A DNA stretch of 64,000 bases, taken from the NCBI GenBank assembly GCA_025786725.1, contig JAHLTZ010000013.1:434001-498000 (forward strand). The letters are read 5' to 3'. The notes beneath the pieces were generated by a model that had not been told where the DNA came from, searched no databases, and worked only from the letters and a program-made list of their open reading frames with translations. Of this stretch, positions 30,250 to 55,200 are shown piece by piece. Each line of letters opens with the position of its first letter. Position 1 is the first letter of the stretch. The position numbers and the translations under genes were made by a program. The stretch is from Syncephalis fuscata S228 (lineage: Eukaryota; Fungi; Zoopagomycota).

Positions 30250-31000
30250 TTACTTCTATGTAGAAATATATGAATGAGTGAATGGGAGCGTGTATAAATA
30301 TTTATGGTCAAGTTATAGTATACATGACAACAAGATAAGCGAAATAAAGCGAGATTATACCGAATAAAGCTAATTACAAACAAGCAATAGTATTAAATAA
30401 AGTGTGTCCATTAGAACATATAACAATGTAAAACAAAACAAATAGACAATAAAGAGTGTATAAATGATGACATTGAAAGTGTAGTACATATGGCTTAACA
30501 AGTGAATGAACGAATGAGCCAAAATTTATGACGAATAGAGACGGTGATAAATGAACAGCGATTTTGAATAGATAGCAGTCAATATATGATGAAAACATAC
30601 AATATAATGAATATACAACTTCGTTGTATAAATAGCAGTACTGAAGCTATAGTGCAATGAGGGGAATGAGTAGAGTGTGTTGGTGTATATAATAAATAGA
30701 ATGTGTCTAGTATATCATAGAATGATGTATAGTAGCGTGGAATGGAATAGAAATGATACATATGAATATAGGATATATATGTACTGAATATGTGCATACT
30801 AAATAATGAATCTATGATGATAAGTATTTGATGATTGATGTCACTCACCACTCACCATCATGTTCAATAGATTTAATATTGTTAAATTTAGTGGCAGGCA
30901 AGTTCTGCTTTAAGCGGATAGGTCCTACAGACCGTTGCCTCACATCAGCAAAATATAAAGAATAAAGAATGTTATTAAATTTAGTCATTTGACCACCAAG
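30250..31000 (-). repeat. Solo minus-strand copy of the head + ~165-bp satellite family
   Basis: 30640-30890 resembles 1130-1365 and 43335-43580. GTCATTTGACC motif at ~30984. A degenerate satellite-like tail continues leftwards. Confidence 0.75.
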
Positions 31001-31454
31001 ATAGCAATAAATGTGATGATTTAATTTATTGCAATAATAATATAATAAAGCATGCAATTCAAGTGATTAAATGACGCATTACAGCTGTCACCAATTCTAT
31101 GGTCATTGTGTCTATACTCAGTCTTTATGTTCAAGTAGCTATCAAAATACTTTATAGTTTTTCTACAATAAACAATATATAACACTTAACACTTACTACA
31201 AAATGATTTAAATCTGTATTAATCTTATAATAGTAACATTTATTAATATTGTTATCGATATGTGCCGTAACAGTTTCGCTGACTGTACAGATAATTGACA
31301 CAAATAAATAATAAGCATTAAATAATAACTAAAATCAAAAGGATAAATATATATGTTTATTAAAAATAAAAATTATTAATTATTAGAGAAAATAAAATAA
31401 GAGAATTAAACTACAAAAATAAAAGATAAGGTTTGCTAGACTTGAAAACTTGGT

Positions 31455-31765
31455 TTAACAAGTGGGCTTGAATTGCATCGTTGATGAACCAACATCAGGC
31501 TCAATTTCATTGTCGATTCCAATGCTCGATGTCACTAAAGCATTCATTGCATTTGTGCCGATAATAAGTCTCCGGGAGTTGTCTTTATATTGTATGGTCG
31601 CATGCACACCAGGATACAATGCGTCACTTGGTGGATGTAATGTCATTCTTGAACTTTTCCCAGTTAGAATCGTTCATGGTGTGCATCGACAGATGGAGTA
31701 CGCCCATATACTTCTAGACAATTGACTAGAATCGCGGCTGTACCCTCCATCAGTATAGCGCCTGT
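31455..31765 (-). pseudogene. Inverted ~310-bp fragment of the zinc-finger gene 34758-36459
   Basis: Approximate reverse complement of 35600-35905 (HPP.D.LYPGVHATIQY.DNSRRL.IGTNAMNALVTSSI.IDNEIEPDVGSSTMQFKPTC) with substitutions and small deletions. Confidence 0.9.
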
Positions 31766-34302: not shown

Positions 34303-34757
34303 CTTCATAGTCAGGTGTTGTAATTACTGTAATAATTACCACATTTGTAACAGTACACAGCATGCTACATGATTAACACATTCATTTAACTTGATAAATA
34401 AATAAAAAAATCTATAGCATTTTTTTAAATAAAACAATCGACAATTATGTGAATATAGCTGTAATTAGACACCATAGCATTATAACAATTATAAGTAATT
34501 TCCTAATAAAACATGTCTTACTTGAGACCAGTTCTCGTCATACAGCACCATGCATTAATTCCTTTATTAAATATAAGGAATTACTAGCGCAATATTCAAT
34601 AAATTATTTGCTTTCTCTTATTCAAAATTTGCTGTGTTCAAATACTTTAAAAACATTTATTGTTTATCTTCCAAGCTACATCCACATCAACTCAAGCGAA
34701 ATCAATATACTATTTCAGTATAACGCCTATCTTTTTGTTTTATTTAAACATTTAAAT

Positions 34758-36459
34758 ATGACTTCCAAGAATCTACTCACTTGCCAATTTTGCCCAGGAT
34801 CTTTATTTAAAACTAAAGGTAGTCTTAGATACCACCAATCTAAAGAACACACCAAGAGTGTTAAAATTACCTTAGTGGGTTTAGGTAGCTTTAATTAAAA
34901 GCTTTAAATAAAGTTAATTAATTTTATTTTATATTTATCTACAGGTCAAGTCACTATCATTAGAAATGAAGACAATATGTTTGTTTGTCCTTGCGGTGCA
35001 TTTTTTCCCGGAAGAGCATCAGTTGCTAGACATGGCAAGCAGTGTGATGGCAAACAAAATCAAGGTAAGCAAGAATAGTATTTTAAAAGTGAAATTAACA
35101 TTAGTTTATTATTTAGGCGACAAACTGGGCTTAATTACATCTATTGGACTAAATACAGCCAACGACCAATTGTCAGCTACAGCCCCGCGATCATTTAACC
35201 ACGCAACATTATCTGCATGCGGTGCTCTCAAAGAAACACCGGATGCTCAGCGTAAAACACTCCGAGTTGTAGATGCATTGGAACTGAAACCAATTGCCTT
35301 AACAGGCCCAGATGGTTTCGAATACAACTTGCTGGGTGACAGTTCGGTAGTTTCTCGTCTAGTAGCTTATCAGCCTGCCGTGACTTTCAATGCTGCTCAT
35401 AGTGAGAAAAGCAAAACAGTAGATGACAATATCGGCTGCTCTAGCAGCGACTTGTCCCATTTAATTCAACATGGGCCATACAATAACTGCATAAGTATAA
35501 ACGACTTTTCCGAGCTGGATGCCAAACTTTGTTATCATTTGAACAAGGATTGGCGATTTAAAAAATCGATGATGTACTTTTGTTCACAAGTACTTGCAGG
35601 GGCCATACTGATGGAGGGTACAACCGCAATTCTAGTTAATTGTCTAGAAGTATATGGGCGTACTCCATCTGTCGATGCACACCATGAACGATTCCTAACT
35701 GGGAAAAGTTCAAGAATGACGTCACATCCACCAAATGACTCATTGTATCCTGGTGTGCATGCGACCATACAATATGAAGACAACTCCCGGAGACTTGTTA
35801 TCGGTACGAATGCAATGAATGCTCTAGTGACATCGAGCATTAGAATCGACAATGAAATTGAGCCTGATGTTGGTTCATCAACGATGCAATTCAAGCCCAC
35901 TTGTAAAACTAGAATTTTTGTGTCGTCAAAGAGCGCTAAATATGCAATGGAATTCATTGAACAAAAGCCGCCTTGCGAGCTATATCCATTTGATACATGT
36001 TCACAATTACGGCAGCTAAGATCAAAATTTAACAACCCCACAACATATTTACTTCTACGTTCATCATCGTCATACACGAACCGGTGTTATTTGCGGCCCT
36101 ATACAATTTGGACACTTGCTGATTTTGATTCGACTGCTGCATTACCTTCACAATCAAGCATGGCATCAAAAATGTTCCAGCTTGTCATATTTGCAGTTAT
36201 AAATGGTACCAATGCTCTCAAGAAGGATGAAATTGAAACCTTGTACGCGGACTGTTCCGATGGAGTGACAAAGGCCTCACTGGAGGCGATTCTAAATCAA
36301 TTTGGATCTTCTGACGAACTTATGGTGTTGAAAAACACCAACTTGAACATGGTGCTAAAACAAATGGCAACAAGCATGATGACTGATCTACAACGGATCA
36401 ACAAGAAAGTTGCCGTATCCATTCTGGATGCCTTTAAATCGCTATGTTCTCATTCTTAA
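34758..36459 (+). CDS. Uncharacterised ~530-aa protein with N-terminal C2H2 and C2HC zinc fingers and an unrecognised C-terminal domain (3 exons)
   Basis: Exon 1 34758-34884 (CQFCPGSLFKTKGSLRYHQSKEH), exon 2 34945-35064 (FVCPCGAFFPGRASVARHGKQC), exon 3 35117-36459. Both introns are GT-AG and the splice is in frame without corrections. Confidence 0.8.
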
Positions 36460-36904
36460 AGTATTTAAGTGTATCATTAAATTGTAGCAATATGAGCTGG
36501 TCGACGTTATTATATTAAATAAATAGTATTTATTTTATTGTTGTTATTGCACTAGCATTAATATTGATTTGGTTTAAAGTTTAACATGATTGATGGTCAA
36601 ATGATTACAATTGATTATATTCGCATAATGAAACTAAAATTTGTTTTATTAAAGATGGGGCCGGATGGTAAAAAATATTCATCATCACATCATCCCATTT
36701 AACATGGTTTGGTGATTAAATGACTACATTTAATAACATTCAACCTATTGAACATGATGGTGGGTGGTGAGTGGCATCAAAGTTTAAAATACTCATCATC
36801 ATAGATTCATTATTCAGTATGCACATATCCAATACACATATATCCAATATTCATATATATCATTTCTATTCCATTCCACGCTACTATATATCCTTTTATG
36901 ATAT

Positions 36905-37790
36905 ACTAGACACATTCTATTGTTTATATGTTTCAACACACTCTACTCATTCCCCTCATTGCACTATATGCGCTATAACGTCAACAGCATTTTATATGTT
37001 TCCTCACCGTACATTTATCATTTTATATACTATTCTATACTTGCCTAGCCTTGCTCTATCCAAAACTATTTTTATTTTTGTTCTAGCTTTATTATTTATA
37101 AATGCCGACTAATTCTGCTCATTGATCATGCATACATGCTCAGTAACTTTAACACGACTAATCGTCACTCAATATTGCATATTCAGTATATTGTATGTTA
37201 TTATACTATATTGTAACTGTGTGATAGCTCTTGCAGTTGTTCTTTTACTGCTAGCTTTATTTTTTTGTAAATTTCAGCTCAATCGCTCATTGGCTCATGC
37301 ATATATGCTCAGTAACTTCAACACTACTAATCGTACAGTTTCCACTGTATACTAAGTATATTGTGTATCGCTCTACCATATAACTGCTACACTTTGTTCA
37401 AACATGTTGTCTGTTTAATTCTAGCTCTACTAACTGTGATTGTTTACTCATTTGTTCAATGGGCAATATGCGCTACAGCTTTAACATCGCTGTTTGTATT
37501 TTGCCATTGTGTTCAGTATCATGGATTATTATGTCATCTAATAGCCAAAAGTGCTAATAAAAGCTGTCTATTTATTGCTAACTATATTCATTATGAATTT
37601 CGAGTCATTTGCTCATTAGGTTATATACACCACAGTCTCAACATCATTATCTATACACTCTTATTGTCTATTTGTTTTATTCTATATCGTTGCATGTTCT
37701 AATAATCACATTCTATTCAACACTGTTGTTCGTTTGCCACTAGCTTTATTCGTTGTAAATCTTGCTTCTATTTGCTCACTCTTTATGTTT
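36905..37790 (+). repeat. Degenerate ~160-175-bp tandem satellite (about 6 monomers; mirrored at ~42520-43400)
   Basis: Recurring ctagcttta...tgtaaa...tcgctcatt...atatgc(t/g)c...aac motif at ~36907, 37083, 37251, 37421, 37578 and 37740. Confidence 0.65.
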
Positions 37791-38774
37791 TAGATAAGAC
37801 ATAAATGACGTTGTTGAAACAATAATGCATTTTAGCTTAATGAATGAAATGAGTGAATTCACAAATAATGGAGTTATTTCCAAACGGACAATAATTTTGA
37901 ATAAAGTTGGCTAATATATGATGAAATACTATATGTTTGTATAAATGTACAATGATAGTAATATGAATGAATACATCTATGTATACAGGATAATAAACTT
38001 ATAATTGATGGTTTGATGATTGGTGCTACTCATCGCCTGTCTTTATATTCACCAAAAAAAAAGTTTAGCTCAACTGCGCGAATGTTACTAATGTATTCAT
38101 TTGATTCTAAATACAAAAATGTTTGATTAATAAAATGTTTAATATCAATTTAAAAACAATGGCAGAACTAGATGGGATAGCTGGTCAAATAAACCACTGA
38201 TGTTATCATTAAAATGGTAACGTGGACGTAATTGTATTGAGTGTAACTTGCTTTAGTATTTTAGGTAAGATAATGACATTTTAATATGGTTCAAGTAACT
38301 AAATGACGCGTTGCGCATAAAGATACTACGAATAGACCAGTCGTTACAAGCAAAAAATCGTCAATACGTTGTATGGCAGTAGTGCTTTATAGTTGCAATT
38401 GCCGGCCAGATATGGTGATTTTATAATAAAAGCTTTCAATGTCATAAACAACTTCATTATCTTGTTAATGATATAAATATAAGTAAAACAACATTATCAC
38501 TGTAGATCAAATAGACGGTATACATTTGGTATTATATATATATATATATGTGTGTGTATTTACTAGTTATTTGTTTATATTTATTTATAGCCGTACGTTT
38601 TGAAAAATAAAATAAATATGCATTCGATAAATTCACTTCTAGCTACTTGCTGCTGTTATCATACGCGTTAAGCGATTTTAAAAAATAAAAACTTATTGTG
38701 CACCAAATAAATGCAAATCTGCCAATGACTGTCCAGACTTGACGTAATACATTGTCATCAAATCATATTGTTTA

Positions 38775-41527
38775 AAGCAAAATAACTTGGTCGTGCTATA
38801 TTTGACCATTTGCTGTGTATAAATGTTGATGATTAGCTGTAGTCTAGTTTATTTAACATGTAAACAATTAAGATTTATTTGTATTTGGTCAATCCACCTA
38901 TTTTCATTTAGACACACCTGCGCTGTTCATTTTATCTGTGATGGTCTGTGTGCGCACTTGCTTTTTGTGATGGTTTCAAGAGCGCACTTGCTTTTTGTGA
39001 TGGTTTCAAGAGCGCACTTGCTTTTTGTGGTGGTTTCAAGAGCGCACTTGCTTTTTGTGGTGGTTTCAAGAGCGCACTTGCTTTTTGTGGTGGTTTCAAG
39101 AGCGCACTTGCTTGCTGTGGTGATCTTGTGTGCGCCTCATGTTCACCATAACCATTCAGCTTTATTTGCTTCCACCTAGTTGGCTAGCAAAACAACTTAT
39201 CACGTTTATTTACAACATTCCACATACATAATTGTGGTTAACAAAAAACATAATAAATAGCCATTCACAAATAAATATAGCACAATTTGGTGTTTGTAAA
39301 ATCGATAGAAACATAAAAACAAATGCTATCTGAAGCAAAATAACTTGGTCGTGCTATATTTGACCATTTGCTGTGTATAAATGTTGATGATTAGCTGTAG
39401 TCTAGTTTATTTAACATGTAAACAATTAAGATTTATTTGTATTTGGTCAATCCACCTATTTTCATTTAGACACACCTGCGCTGTTCATTTTATCTGTGAT
39501 GGTCTGTGTGCGCACTTGCTTTTTGTGATGGTTTCAAGAGCGCATTTGCTTTTTGTGGTGGTTTCAAGAGCGCACTTGCTTTTTGTGATGGTTTCAAGAG
39601 CGCACTTGCTTTTTGTGGTGGTTTCAAGAGCGCACTTGCTTTTTGTGATGGTTTCAAGAGCGCACTTGCTTTTTGTGGTGGTTTCAAGAGCGCACTTGCT
39701 TTTTGTGGTGGTTTCAAGAGCGCACTTGCTTGCTGTGGTGATCTTGTGTGCGCCTCATGTTCACCATAACCATTCAGCTTTATTTGCTTCCACCCAGTTG
39801 GCCAGCAAAACAACTTATCACGTTTATTTACAACATTCCACGTACATAATTGTGGTTAACAAACAACATAATAAATAGCCATTCACAAATAAATATAGCA
39901 CAATTTGGTGTTTGTAAAATCGATAGAAACATAAAAACAAATGCTATCTGAAGCAAAATAACTTGGTCGTGCTATATTTGACCATTTGCTGTGTATAAAT
40001 GTTGATGATTAGCTGTAGTCTAGTTTATTTAACATGTAAACAATTAAGATTTATTTGTATTTGGTCAATCCACCTATTTTCATTTAGACACACCTGCGCT
40101 GTTCATTTTATCTGTGATGGTCTGTGTGCGCACTTGCTTTTTGTGATGGTTTCAAGAGCGCACTTGCTTTTTGTGATGGTTTCAAGAGCGCACTTGCTTT
40201 TTGTGATGGTTTCAAGAGCGCACTTGCTTGCTGTGGTGATCTTGTGTGCGCCTCATGTTCACCATAACCATTCAGCTTTATTTGCTTCCACCTAGTTGGC
40301 CAGCAAAATTGTGCTATATTTATTTGTGAATGGCTATTTATTATGTTTTTTGTTAACCATAATTATGTATGTGGAATGTTGTAAATAAACGTGATAAGTT
40401 GTTTTGCTGGCCAACTGGGTGGAAGCAAATAAAGCTGAATGGTTATGGTGAACATGAGGCGCACACAAGATCACCACAAAAAGCAAGTGCGCTCTTGAAA
40501 CCACCACAAAAAGCAAGTGCGCTCTTGAAACCATCACAAAAAGCAAGTGCGCTCTTGAAACCACCACAAAAAGCAAGTGCGCTCTTGAAACCACCACAAA
40601 AAGCAAGTGCGCTCTTGAAACCATCACAAAAAGCAAGTGCGCTCTTGAAACCATCACAAAAAGCAAGTGCGCTCTTGAAACCACCACAAAAAGCAAGTGC
40701 GCTCTTGAAACCACCACAAAAAGCAAATGCGCTCTTGAAACCATCACAAAAAGCAAGTGCGCACACAGACCATCACAGATAAAATGAACAGCGCAGGTGT
40801 GTCTAAATGAAAATAGGTGGATTGACCAAATACAAATAAATCTTAATTGTTTACATGTTAAATAAACTAGACTACAGCTAATCATCAACATTTATACACA
40901 GCAAATGGTCAAATATAGCACGACCAAGTTATTTTGCTTCAGATAGCATTTGTTTTTATGTTTCTATCGATTTTACAAACACCAAATTGTGCTATATTTA
41001 TTTGTGAATGGCTATTTATTATGTTTTTTGTTAACCACAATTATGTACGTGGAATGTTGTAAATAAACGTGATAAGTTGTTTTGCTGGCCAACTGGGTGA
41101 AAGCAAATAAAACTGAATGGTTATGGTGAACATGAGGCGCACACAAGATCACCACAGCAAGCAAGTGCGCTCTTGAAACCACCACAAAAAGCAAGTGCGC
41201 TCTTGAAACCACCACAAAAAGCAAGTGCGCTCTTGAAACCACCACAAAAAGCAAGTGCGCTCTTGAAACCACCACAAAAAGCAAGTGCGCTCTTGAAACC
41301 ATCACAAAAAGCAAGTGCGCTCTTGAAACCATCACAAAAAGCAAGTGCGCACACAGACCATCACAGATAAAATGAACAGCGCAGGTGTGTCTAAATGAAA
41401 ATAGGTGGATTGACCAAATACAAATAAATCTTAATTGTTTACATGTTAAATAAACTAGACTACAGCTAATCATCAACATTTATACACAGCAAATGGTCAA
41501 ATATAGCACGACCAAGTTATTTTGCTT
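38775..41527. repeat. Head-to-head higher-order repeat: unit = 378 bp + n x 30-bp GCGCACTTGCTTTTTGTG(G/A)TGGTTTCAAGA
   Basis: Plus-strand units start at 38775, 39333 and 39951 (periods 558 = 378+6x30 and 618 = 378+8x30; third unit partial with 4 monomers). Minus-strand units start at 41527 and 40939 (period 588 = 378+7x30; inner unit has 10 monomers). Confidence 0.97.
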
Positions 41528-43719
41528 TAAACAATATGATTTGATGACAATGTATTACGTCAAGTCTGGACAGTCATTGGCAGATTTGCATTTATTTGGT
41601 GCACAATAAGTTTTTATTTTTTAAAATCGCTTAACGCGTATGATAACAGCAGCAAGTAGCTAGAAGTGAATTTATCGAATGCATATTTATTTTATTTTTC
41701 AAAACGTACGGCTATAAATAAATATAAACAAATAACTAGTAAATACACACACATATATATATATATATAATTACCAAATGTATACCGTCTATTTGATCTA
41801 CAGTGATAATGTTGTTTTACTTATATTTATATCATTAACAAGATAATGAAGTTCGTTTATGACATTGAAAGCTTTTATTATAAAATCACCATATCTGGCC
41901 GGCAATTGCAACTATAAAGCACTACTGCCATACAACGTATTGACGATTTTTTGCTTGTAACGACTGGTCTATTCGTAGTATCTTTATGCGCAACGCGTCA
42001 TTTAGTTACTTGAACCATATTAAAATGTCATTATCTTACCTAAAATACTAAAGCAAGTTACACTCAATACAATTACGTCCACGTTACCATTTTAATGATA
42101 ACATCAGTGGTTTATTTGACCAGCTATCCCATCTAGTTCTGCCATTGTTTTTAAATTGATATTAAACATTTTATTAATCAAACATTTTTGTATTTAGAAT
42201 CAAATGAATACATTAGTAACATTCGCGCAGTTGAGCTAAACTTTTTTTTTGGTCAATATAAAGACAGGCGATGAGTAGCACCAATCATCAAACCATCAAA
42301 TTATAAGTTTATTATCCTGTATACATAGATGTATTCATTCATATTACTATCATTGTACATTTATACAAACATATAGTATTTCATCATATATTAGCCAACT
42401 TTATTCAAAATTATTGTCCGTTTGGAAATAACTCCATTATTTGTGAATTCAACTCATTTCATTCATTAAGCTAAAATGCATTATTGTTTCAACAACGTCA
42501 TTTATGTCTTATCTAAAACATAAAGAGTGAGCAAATAGAAGCAAGATTTACAACGAATAAAGCTAGTGGCAAACGAACAACAGTGTTGAATAGAATGTGA
42601 TTATTAGAACATGCAACGATATAGAATAAAACAAATAGACAATAAGAGTGTATAGATAATGATGTTGAGACTGTGGTGTATATAACCTAATGAGCAAATG
42701 ACTCGAAATTCATAATGAATATAGTTAGCAATAAATAGACAGCTTTTATTAGCGACTTTTGGCTATTAGATGACATAATAATCCATGATACTGAACACAA
42801 TGGCAAAATACAAACAGCGATGTTAAAGCTGTAGCGCATATTGCCCATTGAACAAATGAGTAAACAATCACAGTTAGTAGAGCTAGAATTAAACAGACAA
42901 CATGTTTGAACAAAGTGTAGCAGTTATATGGTAGAGCGATACACAATATACTTAGTATACAGTGGAAACTGTACGATTAGTAGTGTTGAAGTTACTGAGC
43001 ATATATGCATGAGCCAATGAGCGATTGAGCTGAAATTTACAAAAAAATAAAGCTAGCAGTAAAAGAACAACTGCAAGAGCTATCACACAGTTACAATATA
43101 GTATAATAACATACAATATACTGAATATGCAATATTGAGTGACGATTAGTCGTGTTAAAGTTACTGAGCATGTATGCATGATCAATGAGCAGAATTAGTC
43201 GGCATTTATAAATAATAAAGCTAGAACAAAAATAAAAATAGTTTTGGATAGAGCAAGGCTAGGCAAGTATAGAATAGTATATAAAATGATAAATGTACGG
43301 TGAGGAAACATATAAAATGCTGTTGACGTTATAGCGCATATAGTGCAATGAGGGGAATGAGTAGAGTGTGTTGAAACATATAAACAATAGAATGTGTCTA
43401 GTATATCATAAAAGGATATATAGTAGCGTGGAATGGAATAGAAATGATATATATGAATATTGGATATATGTGTATTGGATATGTGCATACTGAATAATGA
43501 ATCTACAACGATGAGTATTTGATGATTGATGTCATTCACCATCAACTAGCATGTTCAATAGATTAGATGCTATTAAATGTAGCCATTTGACCACCGGATC
43601 ATGTTAAATGGCAATAAATAAGACAGCAATAAATAAATCATTGGCACTATTATTAAAATAGTTGGTGTAGATGCAGTATTAAATGTAGCTACTTGTAATC
43701 TAGCCATTCAAGTATCAGT

Positions 43720-45450
43720 GACTTTAATTGAATACATGTACCAGTATTATAGTTTTATTAAACATAATAAGACCATTAGACAAACTAGTAATGGAGTCAC
43801 AGTGTTATGTTGATTCAGCAAACACCTCATGCGCTTCTTTATTAAATCTACCATTTCAATGTAATATATGTGTAATGCCCACCACCTCCCTCTTTATTAC
43901 CACCACTTCAATCAAACCAAAGCATTTAGCAGATGCGCAATAGCAATGCCAGTTAGTGTTGGGTAATATAAACCAGATAAGTATATGTCCCATTTAGAAT
44001 CCAGTCCAAACAATAGTACCAACGACAGTATACAGTATTGTTGTCGATGCTTGTGCCAACGAATTCTATAGTTGGTATTGTAAGTTGCATGCAAAATATT
44101 TGTGCCCGATAACAAATGCAGTCAGATATACTTGTCGATCCGGCACCAATGCTCGAATAGCTATAATAAAAGTGCGTTAGTATTGTTTAGTAGTAATAAG
44201 CACCTACATCTAGTTGATTGTTCCTTGCGTATAGTTTATAGCGTACATGAGTGCAGTTGTTTGTATATTGTTGTTAGTTGTTATACAAATAAACTAGAAA
44301 TGTTGTTAAAGTTGTTAAACAAGATAGCAGCTAATATAGCAACTATACGTCCACCTGGAGTACCGGCAATACTACGACTTGGGCGTAAGTAACATTTGTC
44401 GGATGCGTACGGCTCTATATTAGCTGCTATCTTGATGGCGATGCTGTTCAATAAATGTTACAAGATGCCATGGCAATTCAAGCGTAGCAATAAGCTGCAC
44501 CAAACTATGGATTCACCCATTTGTAGTTGATGTTTAGAGCTAAACACATGAACACCACAACATATTACAACTAAACAGCACATCACCATATACTGATATG
44601 TTATTAAATAATTGTAATATAGTAACCAGTCTACACTAAGACATTATCAGTAGTAGAGATGCCATTTGTTTTCGGCCGCTAGTCCTTGTTTATGTCAGTG
44701 TTGTAAAAATTAATAAAAACGGCAGTTGAAAACTAAAATGGTATGGCGACTAGTGTTCTATTACAATCGTTTAACAACACCCACAGGTAAACAGTGTAAT
44801 GCATGGTATTCAGTACGAATAAGCCACATATCACACCAGTCCAGTGTGCGATGATAGTATTCAGCAAGTTGAAGGCTATCAAACACACCTCCAGTGCACG
44901 TTCAATACAAGTGAGCACTAACATATAACCACCCATACAGGTCGCCGCATCAACATGAGGGGAGTGCACAGCAATACTGACTTGCTAAACACAGCACTGC
45001 ACACCCTGTTATCCCACATATCTCCGCACTATGCCAGTATACAGCTGCCTAGTACAGGCAACCATATAGTTGCTGAGCTAGTATAACACAATAGTCTGCA
45101 CTATTGTACTCTACATTCAACACAGCTCAAATGCATAACGCAGTATATCGTGATCAACCAACAAGGAGACCACTCACCACTGGATATAGCTACTAGAACA
45201 GATGCTTCCATTAACAAGCGGTTTATAGCATATTAACAACTAGAAACAAGAGAAAGTGAAGTAATGAGCAAAAGTACTCTCGGCGCAACCTTATAAACTT
45301 GGTCCAAAATATATCCACCAATTAGAATGGGCAATATTGGTAAAGAGTACATGGCGACTGTTCATTGGCATATTGCACCTGACTGGACCATTTTAGTGAG
45401 CAGCCACTATCTATAATACGCTATTTATGTTACTTGAATTGTATCCACTA
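43720..45450 (-). pseudogene. Degenerate MFS (MFSD1-like) transporter pseudogene
   Basis: Minus strand ~45250-45355 reads MYSLPILPILIGGYILDQV...RVLLLITSLSLV, resembling MFSD1 YS.PN....GG.LID. Further hydrophobic segments (ORFs 44733-44969, 43912-44115) are broken by many stops and frameshifts. Confidence 0.35.
44320..44434. repeat. Hairpin with perfect 20-bp arms
   Basis: caagatagcagctaatatag (44320-44339) / ctatattagctgctatcttg (44415-44434). Confidence 0.85.
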
Positions 45451-46244
45451 CTTTATCAGTATCATGTAGATATTATCTTATCAACATATCACTCTACATC
45501 CCTTCCTTTGTTCCACATTTGCTCGCTTTCGCCTTTTATATTTGTTAATTTTTTCTTACAAACTGTCATTTTTTAACTGGTGTCTATCACCATATTTTAT
45601 TAAATAAAATCATTAGAAAATGACAAAATACAATTGATGTTCAAAGGTACCAAATTGCAAAATGTAAATAATTTTGGTGTGAGCTGATGTTAACTATGAG
45701 TGCTATGATTCTTCAATGTAGAATGAACCGAATAGTTTTCAATTACTAAATATGATAATGATAATTAAAATAAATCAATGTAATCATAAATCATAGTAAT
45801 GTGTTACATTACCATGCTTCTGCCACCTGAACATTTTACTCATTACTAATTTCCTTTGATCTTTAGCCATTGACAATTGTACATGGCTAAACTAGCCTTC
45901 TCGTCTTTGCATTACTCGTCATGTACCGGTAAGTTAATTGTGTCAAACAGTTATCTATCATTGATTGACCATTTGCCAACTATATGTTGTATCACTCTAC
46001 AGTTAAACGCGCATTTTTTTCAGAATATGTAGCTAAATATTACTAAACCTTAGTGAATACTTTGTGTTCTCTACAAACACAAGTGATACATGTTGCCATA
46101 TTTTGATTCCGAATAAAAGTGAATAACTTTGTATTTATCATATAAAAAACCATGTTTTATTTTATATACTAACAAAACAACAACGATGGTTAGATTAGGA
46201 CGCAGAAATAGGATAATAATAAAGCACCATTATGTTTATCTGCG

Positions 46245-47558
46245 TTAATAAAGTAAAAGATTATTTAATCCTACTCGATACTCAGGATTGACTACCAAAA
46301 GCTCGTCTACATTACTACCAAGAGAGTGCATAGCTTGTACAACCGCTGGTTTCATGTTGATTGGAATGGTCGATTGCCAGTTATCAATACAGTATATATT
46401 TAAAAAACTTAAATATTCATAAATAGGCATTACCGACCATTGGCCCTGCCGATAATGGTAGCCAAATAGTGGTACTTTTGCAAAAACATGATACAACACA
46501 GAGCCTACTGCCCATGCGTCACGTTTAATAAGATTAACATATTTTTTAACCGTTGTCTCCGGTGCTTCAAAACCAATAGTACGAGTCAAAGGTTCATTGT
46601 CAATTAAATGCTCATCGCTAGAATCGTAACGTAATCCCACAGCATTGTCTAAATCAATAAGCATGATATGAACGTTATTGGGGTCTTCATCGTTTACCAT
46701 AATATCTAAAAGTATCAAGATAAAGTAAGATAATTGCTACAGACAATTTGGTATGAATAAGCGTAAACCTACTGGATGTGCTAATATCACCGTGAGATAC
46801 ACTGATGTCATGTAAGAAATTAACAGCTAATATGATAACATATAATAATTAGATGTGTTATGTTATAATTATATCTATTACCATGAACTATCTGCTTAAA
46901 TAAGCGCTTCATAACAGCTACGGCTGCTTGCAAATCGAGTCCCCTAGTAAACACATCTAACTTTTTGGTGCCACCATAGCTAAGCACCATACAATAATGG
47001 CTATTGACCCAGAAGCTATGCAGTCGTCTTACAATCCACTGGCTACCTTGATGGTTTGCATAGCTTGGATCTTTTTGTCGTTCATTTATATACTGTAGAA
47101 AGATATAGCAGTTGATTAATGCTTTTGTATAATTCATCAAATGGCATAGCAAAGCTTTTACTTACTTTAAGATATTCATTTTCTCTTATAAACCTTGTCT
47201 TCATGGACGAACATTTTAGAAACGCCTTTTTTTTCTGATAAAGCACATCAGCTGTGACTACAAACTCGCTTTGTGAGCCCCACTTGGTAATCACTAAATC
47301 ATCCTCAGAATACGGGCTTGGCGTGTTCACCTTTTCCTTAAACATAATTTCGTGTATGCTATCGACAGTATATATGCTAGAAAAACTTGAAGAAAGGCTT
47401 GGTACTGAAGATATAGATATACTTTTTTCTAATGCTACATCTTGTCTATTATCATTAGATGGTGATGTTGGTGATGGTAGAGCAGCAACAGGAGATTCAC
47501 ATATCTTTATAAGCAACAAAGTGCTCCATAAAATAAGTAAAAAACGTAAATATTTCAT
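46245..47558 (-). CDS. Signal-peptide-bearing protein kinase-like protein (4 exons)
   Basis: ATG 47558 MKYLRFLLILWSTLLLIKICESPVAALP (signal peptide-like). Kinase motifs KAFLKC, FIRE, FKQIVH|AVNFLHDISVSHGDISTS|NIMV, IMLIDLD, TIGFEAPE, KRDAWAVG, LL..NPEYR. Confidence 0.8.
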
Positions 47559-48575
47559 TGGGTAGAAATTTTTAACTTGATGTAGCATAAAAATAAAGTA
47601 TAAATATAATCTATTTGATGCTTTATATAATTTGACTAACAACGACTTGCACACATGCCATTGTATACTAAATAGCATAATAACATGTGGCGGTTTACAT
47701 TTATATACATCGCTAATCAAACTGGAATTTAAATTTATAAGAGTTGCTCAACTAGTGCTAATGCCAAAACGATAGCTATAATTAGAAATGCTCTATTACC
47801 ATATGCGTATTTTTTTTCGGATCTTATTCAAACAATACATATATTTGGCAATTTGTGTAGACTAGATAGTAATGGGGTATAACGCGTGCCATTTCAGCAC
47901 TAAAAGAGTATATAATTATACGCGGATTTCCATTTTGTATATTGATCGCTTGATTGAGATTTAAATTTATTAGTACCACTCACTTAGTGCTAATGATAAA
48001 ATAGCAATTATACAGCGTAATGCATACTCGACTCGTTTTATACATCTAAATTGGTATATAATCATCTACTATTTATATTTACAACATGTCAAATACTATA
48101 TTCCTACTTGATATTTAACGTACTTAACACGCATATGCTACACTCATAAATCAAGTTCAGCTTAGCTATTATGTATATTATATAGTTATAATTAACTAAT
48201 ATAATAAGCAAATATTACCCATATTAGTAGCATGTAACTAGTATTTATTATTATCATATTGTATATATACCCAACAGAAACGCACATAGCTACCACCAAA
48301 TAAACAACAGTAGCAATAAGATAAAGGTATAATATAGTGTAAATTGTGATATATTTTAATTAATTTTAATAATTAATAATGATATATACTAATTTATTTA
48401 ATTAAATACAAATAAAATGACTTTTTAAAATTAAAATACAAATGTTATATAAACAACTGTATTAAATTAATAGTAAACGCCCAAAGCTTAAGCTAAAATG
48501 TAATAATAGCCAAATTACGGAGTTTTAATTTGAGTTTTGAAATAAGTATGTAATTTTACCTTAAAAAATATCCGA

Positions 48576-48648
48576 GGGCGCATGGCCAAATGGATAAGGC
48601 GCCTGACTACGGATCAGGAGATTCCAGGTTCGAGTCCTGGTGTGCTCG
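48576..48648 (+). tRNA. tRNA-Arg (anticodon ACG), intronless
   Basis: Acceptor stem GGGCGCA/TGTGCTC; D arm with TGGCCAAATGGATAAGGC; anticodon arm CCTGA-CTACGGA-TCAGG; T arm CCAGG-TTCGAGT-CCTGG; T5 Pol III terminator at 48653-48657. Confidence 0.97.
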
Positions 48649-49219
48649 GATATTTTTGCTTCAGCAAACTTTTTACATTTTGCTATTTATTTTTACTCAG
48701 CCATTCAGCAAATACTTTTTTATTTAAAAAATCAACAATAGCGGCCTTACAAGAGCCAAATTTTAGCTGTACAAACACAATTGAATAATAAAACATTTAT
48801 TTATGTATATATTACTGTATTAAATATAATAAATACATATTTAAATGATTAATAGACAGTCAGGTTATATATAACACAAACCATCATAGCCTTTATTAAA
48901 TAAACAATTGCATAATAGCTTATTAATACTACTGTACTTTTAGATATAAACACTATACAGTATTATAAATAGGACTGTTTATTAATTAATCGTGTAACCA
49001 TTGTACAACAATCTATTATATACTTAATAAATACAAAATTACTTAATAAATCAATATATATTACATTACAACCAATATATAATAGCAATACTAATTTATT
49101 AAATAACTTTATATTATACCATTGACTGATAAACCATTCTTTATTTTCTTAATAGTTATTGATAATGGAATGTTGTAATGCACAAGTCTTGACTACTGTT
49201 GTTAATCCTACGACCGCCA

Positions 49220-52200
49220 CTACATGTCGTCATCGTCATCTACATCCATGGCTGCCACATTAGCACCATTGACGGCATTCTTCATACGGGCTAGTCGTTC
49301 ACGTAGATCGGCCATAGTTTGAGCACGTTCCGTATCTGCAGCAGCAGCTGTCGATGATGACTGTGATTGACCTGCATCCTTAATTTGCTAACCAATCAAT
49401 CAATCAATCAACTATTAATAATTACTAATAGCTACTTACTTGGTAATCAAATCCGATGGGCACTGATGCTCGTTTAGTAGCATCTAATGCAGCATGGGAA
49501 GGTGTTCTACTAGGAAAGATCATCGATCCAGGACGAGAGGAGGCCGGTGAAGACTATTAACACAAATACTAATTAGTTTAGTGGCTATTAGACGTATTAA
49601 ATACGTACATCTTGGCTTTGATAACCAAACATTTGTTGCAATCGCTGTAATCGCTGTCTATAAGCATCACTCTCTCCTATTATAATAAATAATAAATAAA
49701 TAAATAAATAAAATCTATTATTAATTACTTACCACCCATAGTAGAACTGCTCATATCTGATGATGTATCAGAAATGGTCGATATACGTCTAGTTACACTA
49801 TTTGATCTGGATGGCGATATAGGCGGTGTACTGCCACTTGGGCTGGTGAGCGATTCGCCTCGGTCGGCAGCAATATTGGCCAAGGTGCGACGAATATAGC
49901 TCTGGAATGTACCGGCCTTCTTTAAAAACGTTTCAATAGCTTCACCTTCATTAGGATGGTCCCTCTGGAACTCATACAACTCCATAATTCCCTAACCAAC
50001 ATTATCGTTATAAATACACACGTATATATACCTACACACAGTACTATATAACTTACTTGTTTGGTACGTTCACTTGTACTGATCTTCATAAATATTTGTG
50101 AAAGAGTGGCGTGGATCGGATCTGTTGGTGATTTGAGTGATGGTGATTCCCTATTCGCAGTAGAGCTGTATCCATTACTGCCGCCATATCGATCGGAACG
50201 GTCGCCAGACGGTGAGCTAGACGAACCAGCAGTGCTAGGTGGCCGGTCATCGCTTCTATCCTCTGCTGCCATCGCTCGTCGTGTACCGGTGGTTGATCCG
50301 TCATCACTACCATTCTCCGGTATCGATGCCACTCTTGAACCGGGTCGTGAACCGCCATCTTCAATGACAGGTGCCCGTTTACGCGTTGGATCAATGATGT
50401 GACTCAAATAGCTATACAAATAGCTTTTCTCCACATCCGGAATAAGTGTGAGTTGTGACAATACTTGATCGCCCCAGGCTGCCTTCACTTCATGTAGAAT
50501 GGTTTTAATCGTCTTTTGCGGCATATCACCCAATGGTACACGTTCAGCCACTCGACGTTTCCATTCAGCTGGTGGTAATGCTACGTAGAATTTATGCACA
50601 TTAAATAGCAGTACTGGTGTATCCAGTTCCTGCTGTTTAATACTATCTTGAAGTGTTTTGGTCAGTTTCCAAATACACTTCATAACTAATTCGGCAAACT
50701 TTGTTTGGAATTCTATTTGTGCCTTATCCGTGGTACGTAACATGACCGAACTCGATTGCAGCACCGATAACAACGCACTACAAATCAATCCAGTTAACCA
50801 CTATTATATAATTAAATATCTATTTCTTACCTAAATGCTACATCACGTCGTGTATTATCAAGTATACGAATCATAAGAATGTTAAGGGCCCGCGTTAGCT
50901 GTGCACCCGTCTCCCATTGTTGTAAGCTTTGGTCAAGTAGTCGACGTAGTAACTCTTTAAGTAACTGATGCAAGTAGTCTTCAGTCACTTCCGTGGCAAT
51001 TTCCCGTTTGGAAAATAGCTGCACTAAACAATTCATTAAATGTTTGCACAGTTTAACAAATGTTTGTGACTCCGTGTCGAGTGATGTAAATGAAATATCT
51101 ATTTGAAGTGTAATCGCCTTTACCAGTTCATTAACAAACGGTATGATCTTTGATATATCTTCAGCCAGGTATACTTCAAGCTGTTTAAGACCATGAATAC
51201 TACGATGTGAATCGCCACTGTTAATCTCATCCTTTAATAGACGTGGTTCAATCGCACGTCGTTCAGGACGGACTGGTTTCTGAACCGGCATTTGAGGTGT
51301 AGGTGGCATATCAGCCGGTATTTGATGATCTGTTTCCATAGGGACATCGTTATCCGCGTCATCCGATGCTTGTGGCAAATTTAGCTTATTAAGCTGTAGA
51401 CCAAATTGCCGTGGTGGCGTCATAGCACTATTGTTGCCACCCGCACTTGCACCAAATTGTGGACGGCGCAGTGACGAACCACCCAGTTCACGTGGCTGTA
51501 ATCGTGATGGTATTTGACGTGGTCGTTGTAATTGCTGTGACTGTTGTTGTGCCGGTGGTTCAGTATCAATATCCATATCCATTTCATGATCTGGTTCTGG
51601 CGTAACGGCGGTGGGTGGTCGTGGTCGATTTCGGTATAATAATGACCCACCACCGGGTGCCGGTATACCCGATCCACCACCACCACCGGGCACAGGAATG
51701 CTTGATCCACCACCACTACCGGGTGCCGGTATACCCGATGTGGGTGCTTTCAAACGAGCCTTTTGGAATGAAAATATAGGTGCAGGTTCTTCTTCTTCCG
51801 GTCCAGCATCTGGTTCTTCATCAAAACCCGGTGGTTTATTACGACGGAATCGCTCCTCCAACATATCTTTGTCCTTTTCAGATATACGGCCTAGATATTT
51901 ATGCACTGCACTGCCCACCAATAAATAGGCTTGGAGAATAGCATTCATAGCACCATTTCGCACTGCTGGATCACGATCGCCTATATGCGCAGCAATGGTC
52001 GGCAATGCCTTTTGCGGTGTGCATACAGTTAAATTGTTACGCTGTATTAACAGGCCTAATTCCTCCAGCGACTCGGCACGGGTACGGGCATTTTTTGACT
52101 TTAATCCATGATCCATTATAGTGGCAAATATACGACTGGCTGGACATATGCGGGTCATTTGCTTTAAACTAGCCCGAACACGTACACGAATTGTATCATT

Positions 52201-55200
52201 CTTTTCACCCAGCTATAGCACAACTAACATGAATACTAGTACCAACATAAATATACAATCTACCTACCTTGTTGACAAAATGCGGCAAGAAGGCATTGGC
52301 TTCATATTCGGTCATTCTATAGCCGGCTTCATCAAGCATAGTGAATAAATGCTCAATAAGATCCATACAGCGTAGTTGCATTGTAGTACCGTTATCATAG
52401 AGTCGAATCGATAAGTACTTTAGAATTAGATCCGCATTAGCCATAATACGTTGATTCATCTCTTCACTAGATATACCAAAGCTGGTCTCTGCATCAGTTA
52501 CTAGACAATCATCAAGTATGGATATAGCATTTAGCCAGTCTTTATCCTTGCTATGGGATGCACTAAAGCATAGACTATGTATATTTGATGAGAAGTGTGG
52601 CTGCATTTGATCCGATAGTAGCTGTATTATATCTTTACGCGGTGTATCAAATATCCATTTAGCCGTGGTACGATCTTTATCCGCTCGTATATCTTTGGAT
52701 CTGTTATCAGAGGTAAGTATAGGTGCATCACCACCACCGCCACCATCAGCTGATGACGATGATGCAGCTGCAGCACTACTAGATGATCCAGGTGCCGGTA
52801 TACCGCTACGTGGTCCGCCAATGCCACTACTGCCTGGTGCTACAAGTTTACGTTTAAGCGCCAATTTGGATTTAAGATTAGATGGACGGGCCAGTCCTTT
52901 GGGTGGTGAACCGGGTCGAGCAGGTCCTGGACCAGGTGAGATGGAACGGTCGTTATTGCTACTATTACGACTACTACTACGGCTCATAGAGGTGGCCGTT
53001 GATGGTGGTGCTAGTGCAGAGGCTGGCTTACTAGTAGGAGCACTTGCCGCTGCCTTGCCAGTATCACGACTTCTTAGTCCTTCAACAATAGGTCCAACCG
53101 TCTTGACACCATTGTTCTTTAGACTATTGCATTTACTACGCACTCGGTCAAATCCCACTACCGCAATCAAGTCACCTGTTGTACTTTGTGCCGCTTTACG
53201 TACATCAGCATTTCTATCCATTAGACAGCCAAGTGTAGGTAGGATAATCGGATCAACTTCACTGGCCGATAATCCTTCCGCTTTAGCTACACGTTCTTGT
53301 AGCCATTTCAATAGATCTTTACGCAATGTAGGAGCCTCTGCTTCGAGTGCAGTACCTGCCGGGGGTAGAATAATTGCCAGTGAACATTCATCGGCTAGTT
53401 TGTCAAGTGCACTGGTAACACCGAGTCGTACAGGTGCCTTTGTATCATTAAGATTGGATAGCATCAATGGCAGTAAAGGACGGACCATCTTTTCAAATGG
53501 TTTACCCATGCCTTTAGCCAAAAGGCCTATAATTTCACAAGTAGTAACTACTAAACTCTTATTACTGTCACCTAGACGTCCTTTAAGTGCTGGAATCAAT
53601 TCATTGCCTATCATAACAAGTATAATAATAAGTATAATATACAATATATACAATTAGAGTAATGATTTACCTAGATTTGGTTTAAGGCGAGTATTCGCAG
53701 TGGCTACACCATGAATATGATCGAGTGCTTCTTTACGCACTTTCCAATTAGCATCCATCAATTCCTAAAATAATATGAATACTAACATTATTCCTGTTAT
53801 TAATAACTTACTTTATATAATTTATTTGGTATTTGTGATGTAATATCTATACGGGGGAATAGTTCATCCATAACATCGGCTGAACCACCACCACCACCAC
53901 TGCCACCAGCATCACCACCATCATCCTATCATATCATATCATATCATATTATTAGTAATAGTCAAATCAAATCAACTACTACTTACACCACCACCACCTT
54001 TTGTAGGTTGGGGAGGAGGCAATGCAGCTACTCGTTCAAATTCGGCATCAATATTTGTTAATACTGCTGGACTCACATCCTGTACAAATGTACGAATATC
54101 TAGCATTATACAACATCTATTAGTAGTCACCTATAAATACGTATATAATTGTATATTACCTGGACCGGCAAACATACGAATAACACCGAGGAGAGCAATG
54201 CTATTGGTACGCACTGCAGCATTCGTGCTACTTAATAATGATTTGGCAAATTCAATTAAATCACGAATAGCCAATCCACGAATACCAAAATCACTTAAAG
54301 TAGTCTGCATCCATAAAAGTGCATCAGATTGAGCCTTGGGTGCTTTCTGACTCTTAATCGAATCATAGACTAAATAGTAAATACATTAATATAAATACAC
54401 TGATTATAATAATGGCTTTACCTTGCGAGAATACAAATTGTAATGATATCTTTTCTGCAATGGCTGTTAAACTATCACCGGCACTTTTCTTTACTTTGAT
54501 GTCACCCAATTTATCCGTCATACCTATACAAATAGTTAATACAAGCGTAAATACAATACTATAGAGTTATTACCAGAAATACAAAGAGCACCACAGGCTC
54601 GAGTAAAGTTATTACTTTGAGTGGCCAGTAATCCAATAACACCAAATACTTTGGATAATACCTATTGATTGATTCATTACTATGGTTATTATGGTATTAT
54701 GGCTATTATGGCTATATAGCTTACTTGAAAGTTATTGTCTTTCCATCCCGGCTTCTTGGACATCATACGAATAACTAATTCAGGATGAATAGCACTGCAT
54801 CCTGTTCTATAAGCGAATGAACAGATTCCACCGCTATATAATATAATATTAATTAATATTATATTAATTTAGGATTATTTAATGTACATACCAGCTAGAC
54901 GGGTCTTCCAATTAGAATTGGCAATATCGGTAAGAATATTGGCGGGGAATGCTTCTTCAATCATGCCTTGGGCTGTATCTGGATTGAATTTATAGACAAT
55001 GGGTTCATCAGGCTTGGATCCTTTCTTTGGTGCCGGTGGAGGGGCACTTTTAGCAGCAGCCGGTGCAGCTTTCTTAGGCGGACCTGCACCAATCTATTAC
55101 CATATATATATATATTAACCTAATCAATATCCATATTAATACTAACTAATAAATACTTACTTTTGGTTTGGCTGGACCAAGTTTTGGTTTTAGTTTTGGT

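What the first reader, a model, noticed from the sequence alone, without database searches (positions are those of the whole stretch)
36802..43505. 6.7-kb near-perfect palindrome whose arms differ in repeat copy number
Seen: the ~2-kb outer arms are almost identical (a few 1-nt differences), but the inner arrays differ. The outermost HOR units have 6 vs 7 monomers and the second units 8 vs 10, with different G/A variant order and SNPs (ccacctagttggct vs tcacccagttggcc). Both second units share a private variant (GCGCATTTGC in monomer 2). A pure fold-back read artefact should copy the arrays exactly. Inference: a real, recent or conversion-homogenised palindrome with fast-evolving arrays, or two alleles/loci joined in assembly. 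Knowledge: long palindromes with short spacers are normally unstable (cruciform cleavage), so persistence would imply function or recent origin.
Basis: partly seen in the sequence, partly recalled or inferred. Interest (0 to 1): 0.85.

Follow-up and report, generated by a model that had tools for sequence, protein, structure and literature searches.

The report
Real fold-back palindrome on dispersed repeats
A 6.9-kb mirror-image stretch in the mould parasite Syncephalis fuscata is most likely a genuine inverted duplication, made when 3.3 kb beside a fold-back repeat was copied backwards onto a neighbouring repeat, and it looks like a by-product of repeat instability, not a device with a job.

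Summary
The inverted repeat runs 36695-43611. Its outer 107 bp are only 78% alike. The next 2.1 kb differ by one substitution and five 1-nt gaps. The inner arrays (378-bp spacer plus n x 30-bp monomers) have 6/8/4 monomers on the left and 7/10 on the right, around a 93-nt loop.

It is very likely real. A 12-kb allelic haplotig (C193) carries the same centre junction and the same outer switch point, with its own SNPs and monomer counts.

The left arm is native and the right arm is the copy. The right flank and the right outer 107 bp match paralogous repeat units at 96-99%, and identity falls to 76-79% exactly at 43504/43505. The left arm is the right-hand long inverted arm of a decayed fold-back element that carries a C2H2 zinc-finger gene with an alkyladenine-glycosylase-like fold.

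The best model is a single one-ended copying event between two inverted fold-back units, closed by a 3-nt microhomology joint. Array slippage and probably arm-to-arm exchange followed. No function is indicated.

Earlier agents had already noted many similar palindromes and this fold-back family elsewhere in the genome.

The parts
30342..30983 (-). Decayed left long inverted arm (fold-back unit) of the gene-carrying element whose right arm is the palindrome's left arm.
   Evidence: Inverted matches 30648-30892/36968-36723 (88.6%), 30342-30559/37773-37563 (72%) and 30967-31020/36741-36689 (80%). Five paralogous gene copies show the same arrangement.
34449..36459 (+). Gene for a C2H2 zinc-finger protein with an alkyladenine-DNA-glycosylase-like central fold (NCBI KAI9595880.1, Syncephalis fuscata). 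It is the cargo gene of the fold-back element.
   Evidence: The product is 100% identical over 447 aa to P0003. The family has 620 clusters. Pfam finds only C2H2 domains. The model has pLDDT 80.7, and its best fold match is human AAG 1ewn_A at Z 9.4, rmsd 3.9, 161 aligned, with the next unrelated chain at Z 5.8.
36595..36694 (+). Terminal subrepeat of the left fold-back unit, lying outside the palindrome.
   Evidence: About 10 of the 20 family loci fetched match this stretch, and dispersed 75-82% matches were found.
36695..36801 (+). Left outer edge: native fold-back sequence, 78% like its mirror partner.
   Evidence: There are 24 differences from 43611-43505. Identity to this unit's own paralogues stays at 82-93% across 36801/36802.
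36802..38774 (+). Left arm, near-perfect part: the rest of a whole fold-back unit (to about 38145, with its own inner inverted end at 37801-38145), then about 630 bp found only at this locus.
   Evidence: (score 86 against 42.8 +/- 6.3 in shuffles).
38775..40308 (+). Left arrays: three units of a 378-bp spacer plus 6, 8 and 4 monomers of 30 bp. The third unit is cut at the centre junction.
   Evidence: The monomer occurs nowhere else in the genome.
40309..40401 (-). 93-nt loop: the next 93 nt of the unit, here continuous with the right arm. The joint at 40308/40309 has a 3-nt AAA/TTT microhomology.
   Evidence: (pair I15). The DNA hairpin of 40100-40610 folds at -238 kcal/mol, z = -40.
40402..41527 (-). 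Right arrays: two units with 10 and 7 monomers.
41528..43504 (-). Right arm, near-perfect part: a copy of the left arm.
   Evidence: It is only 76-79% identical to the paralogues of its own flank.
43505..43611 (-). Right outer edge: the remnant of the fold-back unit that belongs to the neighbouring 1.8-kb repeat. The switch point is 43504/43505.
   Evidence: It is 96-97% identical to three C224 paralogues, and identity drops abruptly further inward. C193 has the same 24 edge variants.
43612..45398 (+). A 1.79-kb non-coding multicopy repeat that carries a fold-back unit at this end in its paralogues. It is not unique flank.
   Evidence: The search gave 59 matches, 13 of them full-length at 93-98%. 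The repeat is joined to a fold-back unit in C224. It has no ORF above 96 aa.

Best explanation
This is a real chromosomal quasi-palindrome of Syncephalis fuscata, created by one inverted duplication.

The starting state (inferred) ran, left to right: a decayed fold-back element (long inverted arms around a zinc-finger/glycosylase-like gene), about 630 bp of local DNA, a local two-level minisatellite, and then an inverted fold-back unit about 78% similar, belonging to a neighbouring 1.8-kb repeat.

After a break between the minisatellite and that neighbouring unit, 3.3 kb of the left side was copied in reverse. The synthesis ran either outward from an intrastrand fold-back or inward from an invasion at the fold-back homology. 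One end of the new copy is a 3-nt microhomology joint that leaves a 93-nt loop (40308/40309). The other end is a switch inside the homologous fold-back units (43504/43505).

Shown here: the anatomy, the left-to-right copy direction, the sharp switch point, and the presence of both in a second haplotype.

Inferred: the break-repair mechanism; later changes in unit and monomer number by slippage or unequal exchange; continuing arm-to-arm exchange that keeps the arms alike within a haplotype and may flip the centre.

I assign it no cellular function.
For: The anatomy and its significance are shown.

Copy direction. The right flank is 97-99% identical to the C224 paralogues and the right outer 107 bp are 96-97% identical. 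Identity falls to 76-79% from 43504 inward. The left unit keeps 82-93% identity to its own paralogues across the matching point.

Second haplotype. C193 is collinear with window 40622-52466 (98.6-99.8%). The stretch 45401-48500 exists only in C35 and C193. SNPs between them are patchy, as expected of alleles. C193 has the same stems, the same breakpoints and the same outer switch, but two loop SNPs and 7/5 monomers instead of 7/10.

The five 1-nt gaps in the left arm lie exactly at the five sites where the two right-arm alleles differ. This is what a collapsed two-haplotype consensus would give. It implies that the left arms differ at the same sites, so the arms co-vary within a haplotype.

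The private T variant is shared by the mirror-partner units of C35 and is absent from the C193 units assembled.

The arm ends are members of a dispersed family of fold-back units with unrelated flanks. Other large inverted repeats in this genome include such units.

MycoCosm lists the S. fuscata S228 assembly without the 'single-cell' label carried by its amplified relatives (PMC7466969).
Against: Continuity from the left flank through the centre to the right flank therefore rests on one contig path through about 1.5 kb of arrays.

The right anchor 43612-45398 is itself multicopy.

The opposite loop orientation in C193 could be a real flip. It could equally be left-side reads placed in reverse within the identical 2-kb arms, so it cannot be counted as proof of recombination.

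A 3-nt A/T microhomology is weak evidence in AT-rich DNA.

The two repair routes (fold-back priming first, or invasion at the fold-back homology first) predict the same product and cannot be told apart.

Absence of function was not tested. No RNA, chromatin or population data were available.
Confidence: 0.72

Rival explanations
1. Assembly or library artefact. The two arms exist, but the centre (the arrays plus the fold-back joint) is a mis-join or a chimeric fold-back molecule, and the true locus holds other sequence between the arms or the arms are not adjacent.
For: No reads were checked. The left arm carries consensus errors (five 1-nt gaps), which shows the region was hard to polish. Haplotig C193 stops 359 bp past the centre. 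Earlier agents' notes (unchecked) report many palindromes in this assembly and raise assembly error for some of them.
Against: Two contigs with different SNPs and different monomer counts carry the same joint at the same two positions. Random in-vitro chimeras would not recur in this way. The arms lie in unrelated flanks inside a 669-kb contig. The outer switch sits inside 78%-similar repeats, where an overlap-based mis-join is implausible, and it too is shared by both contigs. The arrays are not mirror copies. The loop is local sequence, not adapter.
Confidence: 0.1
2. An old inverted pair of segments kept identical purely by continuing gene conversion, with 36801/36802 marking the edge of the conversion domain. 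On this view there was no single recent copying event and no defined donor arm.
For: Both haplotypes share the structure, so it is not brand new. The arms appear to co-vary within haplotypes. Sex-chromosome palindromes behave this way (PMC3723533 and PMC8600007, abstracts seen).
Against: The right outer edge and flank belong to a different, 96-99% conserved repeat subfamily, and the inner right arm does not. The right arm's interior therefore replaced other sequence at some point, which means it was a copy from left to right. The centre has the form of a break-repair joint with a single-copy loop. The arm interior beyond the fold-back unit exists nowhere else.
Confidence: 0.1
3. A functional element that uses the hairpin: a source of long hairpin RNA and small RNAs, an invertible switch, or the core of a regional centromere in the 16-kb gene-poor AT-rich domain.
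For: The hairpin potential is very strong. The domain 29.9-45.9 kb lacks long ORFs apart from the zinc-finger gene. The loop lies in opposite orientation in the two contigs. It is retained in both haplotypes.
Against: No gene, promoter-to-gene arrangement or known RNA lies in the arms or the loop. The 30-bp monomer and the arm interior are unique to this locus. Gene-poor stretches of 8-10 kb are common in this window, and similar inverted repeats elsewhere flank ordinary genes. The loop holds only 93 nt of repeat-unit sequence, so a flip changes nothing that can be read out.
Confidence: 0.06

Closest known systems
Fold-back inverted duplications formed at a double-strand break (Hermetz et al. 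2014, PMC3907307; palindromic amplification in yeast and Tetrahymena, from my own knowledge)
   Same: An inverted copy sits next to the original, with a short single-copy spacer at the point of symmetry and short inverted or micro-homology at its edge (abstract).
   Different: Here the event is small (3.3 kb) and resolved inside the chromosome. The outward end switched into a pre-existing inverted repeat instead of producing a dicentric chromosome or a terminal deletion. It is fixed in both haplotypes of a wild fungus.
Foldback-type transposons with long, internally repetitive inverted ends (Drosophila FB, Galileo, Tetris; PMC3573991, PMC4079207)
   Same: The arm ends belong to a dispersed family of 0.8-1.3-kb units with 100-300-bp inverted ends built of roughly 110-bp and 168-bp subrepeats. 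Larger members have long inverted arms around one gene. The structures are very variable and sequence is exchanged between copies (abstract).
   Different: No target-site duplications were found. The enclosed gene shows no transposase domain and has a glycosylase-like fold. Most of the palindrome (the arm interior and the arrays) is locus-specific DNA, not element sequence.
Large sex-chromosome palindromes maintained by arm-to-arm gene conversion (human Y P1-P8 and X palindromes; PMC3723533, PMC8600007)
   Same: The arms are more than 99.9% alike with a sharp outer boundary and a unique spacer. There are signs that the arms co-vary within a haplotype, and there is a possible spacer inversion (abstracts).
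   Different: This palindrome is a thousand-fold smaller, has no genes in the arms, has a 93-nt spacer, and contains minisatellites that break the symmetry. Conversion is inferred here from consensus gaps, not measured.
Expansion and flip-flop of the plastid inverted repeat, and yeast inverted-repeat centromeres such as Komagataella phaffii (from my own knowledge, not checked in papers here)
   Same: An inverted repeat grows by copying adjacent single-copy DNA from one arm to the other, and recombination between the arms inverts the middle.
   Different: Those are stable, functional architectures with long single-copy middles. Nothing here shows function, and centromere identity could not be tested.

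Membership tests
Fold-back (intrastrand) inverted duplication | An inverted copy directly adjoining the original | tested here: met
   36695-40308 against 43611-40402.
Fold-back (intrastrand) inverted duplication | A single-copy spacer at the centre with short inverted or micro-homology at its boundary | tested here: met
   The loop is 93 nt and the joint has a 3-nt AAA/TTT overlap. The microhomology is weak evidence in AT-rich DNA.
Fold-back (intrastrand) inverted duplication | A dicentric intermediate, a terminal deletion or a translocation at the far end | tested here: not met
   The far end switches into an inverted homologous repeat and normal flank follows. The mechanism may be the same, but the resolution differs.
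Foldback/Galileo-type DNA transposon | [quoted passage not shown] | tested here: met
   At least 40 copies were scored out of 957 candidates, with unrelated flanks, inverted ends 70-90% alike and subrepeats.
Foldback/Galileo-type DNA transposon | Target-site duplications at the insertion | tested here: inconclusive
   No direct repeat was seen at the ends of the 20 copies fetched, but the ends are ragged because subrepeat number varies and the flanks are AT-rich.
Foldback/Galileo-type DNA transposon | A recognisable transposase (P-element/THAP or Mutator type) in full-length copies | tested here: not met
   The enclosed gene has only C2H2 fingers in Pfam. Its core folds like alkyladenine DNA glycosylase (Z 9.4). 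A profile of the core finds no solved relative by sequence.
Gene-conversion-maintained palindrome (sex-chromosome type) | Arm identity above 99.9% with a sharp boundary and a unique spacer | tested here: met
   One substitution in 2,139 bp, a step to 78% at 36801/36802, and a 93-nt loop.
Gene-conversion-maintained palindrome (sex-chromosome type) | Demonstrated arm-to-arm conversion (the arms share variants that differ between chromosomes) | tested here: inconclusive
   The five left-arm gaps coincide with the five allelic sites of the right arms, and a private monomer variant is shared by mirror units. However, the left arm is a collapsed consensus.
Inverted-repeat regional centromere | CENP-A occupancy, one such locus per chromosome | not testable with these tools
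   No chromatin data were available. The arm interior and monomer are unique to this locus, which neither supports nor excludes this.
Alkyladenine (AAG/MPG-type) DNA glycosylase (the neighbouring gene only) | The AAG fold | tested here: met
   Model residues 212-416 against 1ewn_A residues 82-295: Z 9.4, rmsd 3.9, 161 aligned, next unrelated chain at Z 5.8. Foldseek probability is 0.8-0.96, but with E about 0.02.
Alkyladenine (AAG/MPG-type) DNA glycosylase (the neighbouring gene only) | The catalytic glutamate and the base-flipping tyrosine in equivalent positions | not tested
   The family has invariant E260, Y262, D269 and H271. I recall a similar E-x-Y...H motif in AAG, but no residue-level structural alignment was available. 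This is a lead only.

The most novel reading that the evidence does not exclude
The fold-back units and the zinc-finger/glycosylase-like gene they enclose form an undescribed kind of selfish element in zygomycete fungi. On this reading its enzyme makes base-excision lesions or nicks in its own arms. The resulting breaks are what repeatedly seed palindromes and inverted duplications such as this one across the Syncephalis genome, and the centre flips in vivo.
Probability: 0.1. Interest if true: 0.75.

Novelty: new member of a known kind. Interest (0 to 1): 0.35.

Why it matters
This is a cleanly dissectable natural example of how an inverted repeat grows. The donor arm, the recipient repeat, both junctions and a second allele can all be read from the sequence.

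It shows that dispersed fold-back units act as landing sites that let a fold-back copy resolve without breaking the chromosome. That may explain why this genome holds so many palindromes.

There are also practical points. The assembly has consensus errors and possibly orientation ambiguity at such loci. The apparent 'unique' right flank is multicopy, so any read-based validation must anchor beyond 45400.

Tried and rejected
- Independent contigs by exact protein look-up found nothing.
- Telomere-fusion idea: TTAGGG x4 is absent from the assembly, so the telomere repeat is unknown. The 30-bp monomer occurs only at this locus and its haplotig. Nothing supports a chromosome-end origin.
- Known RNAs: Rfam gave only sub-threshold matches to long plant miRNA hairpin models (83 bits against a gathering score of 200). 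These reflect the hairpin alone.
- Coding arrays: several frames of the monomer are open, and the unit ORFs are hydrophobic translations with no support. I rejected them as genes.
- Kinase linkage of the fold-back family: a kinase C-terminal fragment lies next to the unit only in one subgroup (C157 and window 1.4-2.3 kb). It is not general.
- Target-site duplications were not found.
- A sequence profile of the glycosylase-like core finds no solved relative.


Full report
ORGANISM AND SETTING

The window is C35:434001-498000 of a 29.4-Mb, 371-contig assembly. The ORF at 34966-36459 is 100% identical over 447 aa to NCBI KAI9595880.1, a 'hypothetical protein [Syncephalis fuscata]' on a contig of 668,898 bp, which is the length of C35. 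This confirms the species named in earlier agents' notes. MycoCosm lists S. fuscata S228 without the 'single-cell' label used for its amplified relatives (PMC7466969). That is weak evidence against whole-genome amplification.

THE OBSERVATION

An inverted self-match joins 36695-39906 to 43611-40306 (pairs).

A three-way alignment of the outer arms shows three zones.
- The outermost 107 bp (36695-36801 against 43611-43505) differ at 24 positions.
- From 36802 inward, 2,139 bp differ by one substitution (38050) and five 1-nt gaps, all in the left arm.
- Further in lie units of a 378-bp spacer plus n copies of a 30-bp monomer.

The left side has monomer counts 6, 8 and 4. The right side has 7 and 10. 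The G/A patterns differ between the sides. A private T variant sits in monomer 2 of both second units.

The left third unit is cut at 40308 and joined to the reverse complement of the unit starting 93 nt further along. This gives a 93-nt loop (40309-40401), a 181-bp inner stem, and a 3-nt AAA/TTT overlap at the joint. Outside 36695/43611 the inverted similarity is at shuffle level.

IS IT REAL?

The internal evidence is nevertheless strong.

Contig C193 (12,249 bp) is collinear with window 40622-52466 at 98.6-99.8%. The stretch 45401-48500 occurs only in C35 and C193. SNPs between the two are patchy, 0-23 per 500 bp. C193 is therefore the allelic haplotig of the right half.

C193 crosses the centre by 359 bp and shows the same stems and the same two breakpoints. 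It differs by two SNPs in the loop and has 7 and 5 monomers instead of 7 and 10. It also has all 24 right-edge variants. Two alleles that share both junctions argue against a random chimera.

The five gaps in the left arm fall exactly at the five sites where the C35 and C193 right arms differ. The simplest reading is that the left arm is a collapsed consensus of two haplotypes that was never properly polished. If so, the two left arms differ at the same sites as the two right arms, which means the arms co-vary within a haplotype.

WHAT THE ARMS ARE MADE OF

The first 640 bp or so of each arm belong to a dispersed family. At least 40 copies were scored out of 957 candidates, at 76-88% identity, on many contigs. 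Twenty copies that I fetched are units of 830-1,330 bp. They have inverted ends of 100-300 bp (70-90% alike), terminal subrepeats of about 110 bp, and unrelated flanks. I found no target-site duplication.

Each palindrome arm contains one whole, diverged unit (36695 to about 38145; its inner inverted end gives z about 7). This is followed by about 630 bp and the arrays, which exist only here and in C193.

The left unit has an older mirror partner at 30342-30983 (72-89%). Between these two units lies the zinc-finger gene.

Five paralogous copies of that gene share 34% amino-acid identity with the window's gene and are 99% alike among themselves. Each is flanked by the same units in the same inward-facing inverted arrangement, with arms of at least 420 bp at 96-98.6%. 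The palindrome's left arm is therefore the right-hand long inverted arm of a decayed, gene-carrying fold-back element.

DIRECTION OF COPYING

The 'unique' right flank 43612-45398 is a non-coding repeat. The search gave 59 matches, 13 of them full-length at 93-98%. In its paralogues on C224 it is joined to a fold-back unit exactly as it is here.

Against three C224 paralogues:
- The window's right flank is 97-99% identical, apart from two variable bins.
- The right outer 107 bp are 96-97% identical.
- From 43504 inward, identity drops at once to 76-79%.

The left unit shows no such step against its own closest paralogues. It stays at 82-93% across 36801/36802.

So the right side was once an ordinary unit of the 1.8-kb repeat. 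Its interior was overwritten by a reverse copy of the left arm. The left arm is the donor, and 43504/43505 is the point where the copy merged into the resident homologous unit.

MECHANISM (INFERRED)

A break lay between the arrays and the right-hand unit. Two routes give the observed product.
- The left end folded back on itself at the 3-nt homology and was extended outward, until the new strand could anneal with the inverted resident unit.
- The right end invaded the left unit at the fold-back homology, copied inward, and was joined to the left end at the 3-nt homology.

Both routes give the same result, and I cannot separate them. The first corresponds to the fold-back model of inverted duplication with a single-copy spacer (PMC3907307). 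The difference is that here the far end resolved inside the chromosome.

Afterwards the arrays changed by whole units (three against two) and by monomers. These changes now differ between arms and between haplotypes.

THE LOOP ORIENTATION

In C193 the loop is continuous with the left stem. In C35 it is continuous with the right stem. This is what a crossover between the arms would produce. It is equally what would appear if reads from the left half had been placed in reverse within the identical 2-kb arms when the haplotig was built. The unit types on either side fit both readings. I rate a real flip at about even odds, and I do not use it as evidence.

FUNCTION

Nothing indicates one.
- There is no credible gene in the arms, the arrays or the loop.
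- There is no Rfam family above threshold.
- The monomer is locus-specific.
- Gene-poor stretches of similar size are common in the window.
- Comparable inverted repeats elsewhere simply flank ordinary genes. Examples are window 813-2319 against 19897-21399, and C157 arms of at least 2.2 kb at 99.96% around a 4.5-kb gene-bearing spacer.

The 93-nt loop and the unequal arrays leave only a 181-bp uninterrupted inner stem. From general knowledge of inverted-repeat fragility in yeast, this should lower cruciform-driven breakage and could explain persistence without selection.

THE NEIGHBOURING GENE

Its family is large: 620 clusters at 50% identity. The ten clusters I looked up are all from Mucoromycota and Zoopagomycota. 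Pfam finds only N-terminal C2H2 fingers.

An AlphaFold model (pLDDT 80.7) has a core, residues 212-416, that matches human alkyladenine DNA glycosylase with Z 9.4 (rmsd 3.9, 161 of 200 residues). The next unrelated chain scores 5.8. Foldseek agrees only weakly, and there is no sequence-level match.

This independently reproduces an earlier agent's reading of a zinc-finger-guided base-excision-like enzyme inside this fold-back family. Whether the protein acts on the arms is unknown.

VERDICT

The finding is a real, well-explained structural variant of a known kind: a fold-back-type inverted duplication seeded on foldback-like repeats. The assembly caveats stand, and no function is in evidence. 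Earlier agents had already noted similar palindromes and this repeat family elsewhere in the genome. New here are the donor/recipient assignment, the two junctions and the allelic confirmation.

Noticed in passing
window 43612-45398: A 1.79-kb non-coding repeat (59 matches, 13 full-length at 93-98%) that ends sharply at 45398 and carries a fold-back unit at its other end in paralogues on C224, C357, C113 and C319. It may be the abundant non-coding RNA gene family described in earlier notes, but I did not test that.
   Followed up: partly
window 34449-36459; L054-L059: A C2H2 zinc-finger protein with an alkyladenine-glycosylase-like core fold (Z 9.4 to 1ewn_A). Its family has 620 clusters in zygomycete fungi. 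S. fuscata has five 99%-identical copies on short contigs, each between inverted fold-back units.
   Followed up: partly
window 31453-31764 and 35597-35909: A 312-bp internal piece of the zinc-finger gene is duplicated in inverted orientation 3.8 kb upstream (94.6%).
   Followed up: no
window 813-2319 and 19897-21399: A 1.5-kb inverted repeat (92.5%) encloses 17.6 kb of ordinary genes (fungalysin M36, acyltransferase). Each arm holds a fold-back unit plus a fragment of a kinase C-terminus that is 95% like C157:28647-29517.
   Followed up: partly
L024 (C157:27000-36999): Inverted arms of at least 2.2 kb at 99.96% identity, running off the fetched stretch, around a 4.5-kb spacer with two ordinary ORFs. 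A fold-back unit sits at the inner edge of each arm.
   Followed up: partly
window 37552, 37854, 38004, 38449, 38531: The primary contig has 1-nt deletions exactly at heterozygous sites. This suggests unpolished consensus in collapsed or repeated regions of this assembly, and such errors could create false frameshifts elsewhere.
   Followed up: no
whole assembly G000: Four tandem TTAGGG repeats occur nowhere in the assembly, so either the telomere repeat differs or the chromosome ends are not assembled.
   Followed up: no
window 7923-9852: A fungalysin (M36) gene appears as three overlapping or adjacent ORFs on the minus strand. These could reflect short introns, frameshifts or consensus errors.
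   Followed up: no
window 37069-37194 and 37237-37364: Degenerate direct subrepeats of about 168 bp lie inside the fold-back unit (77% alike). These are the 'hidden satellite' of another first-stage note, and they are part of the dispersed family, not a local satellite.
   Followed up: partly
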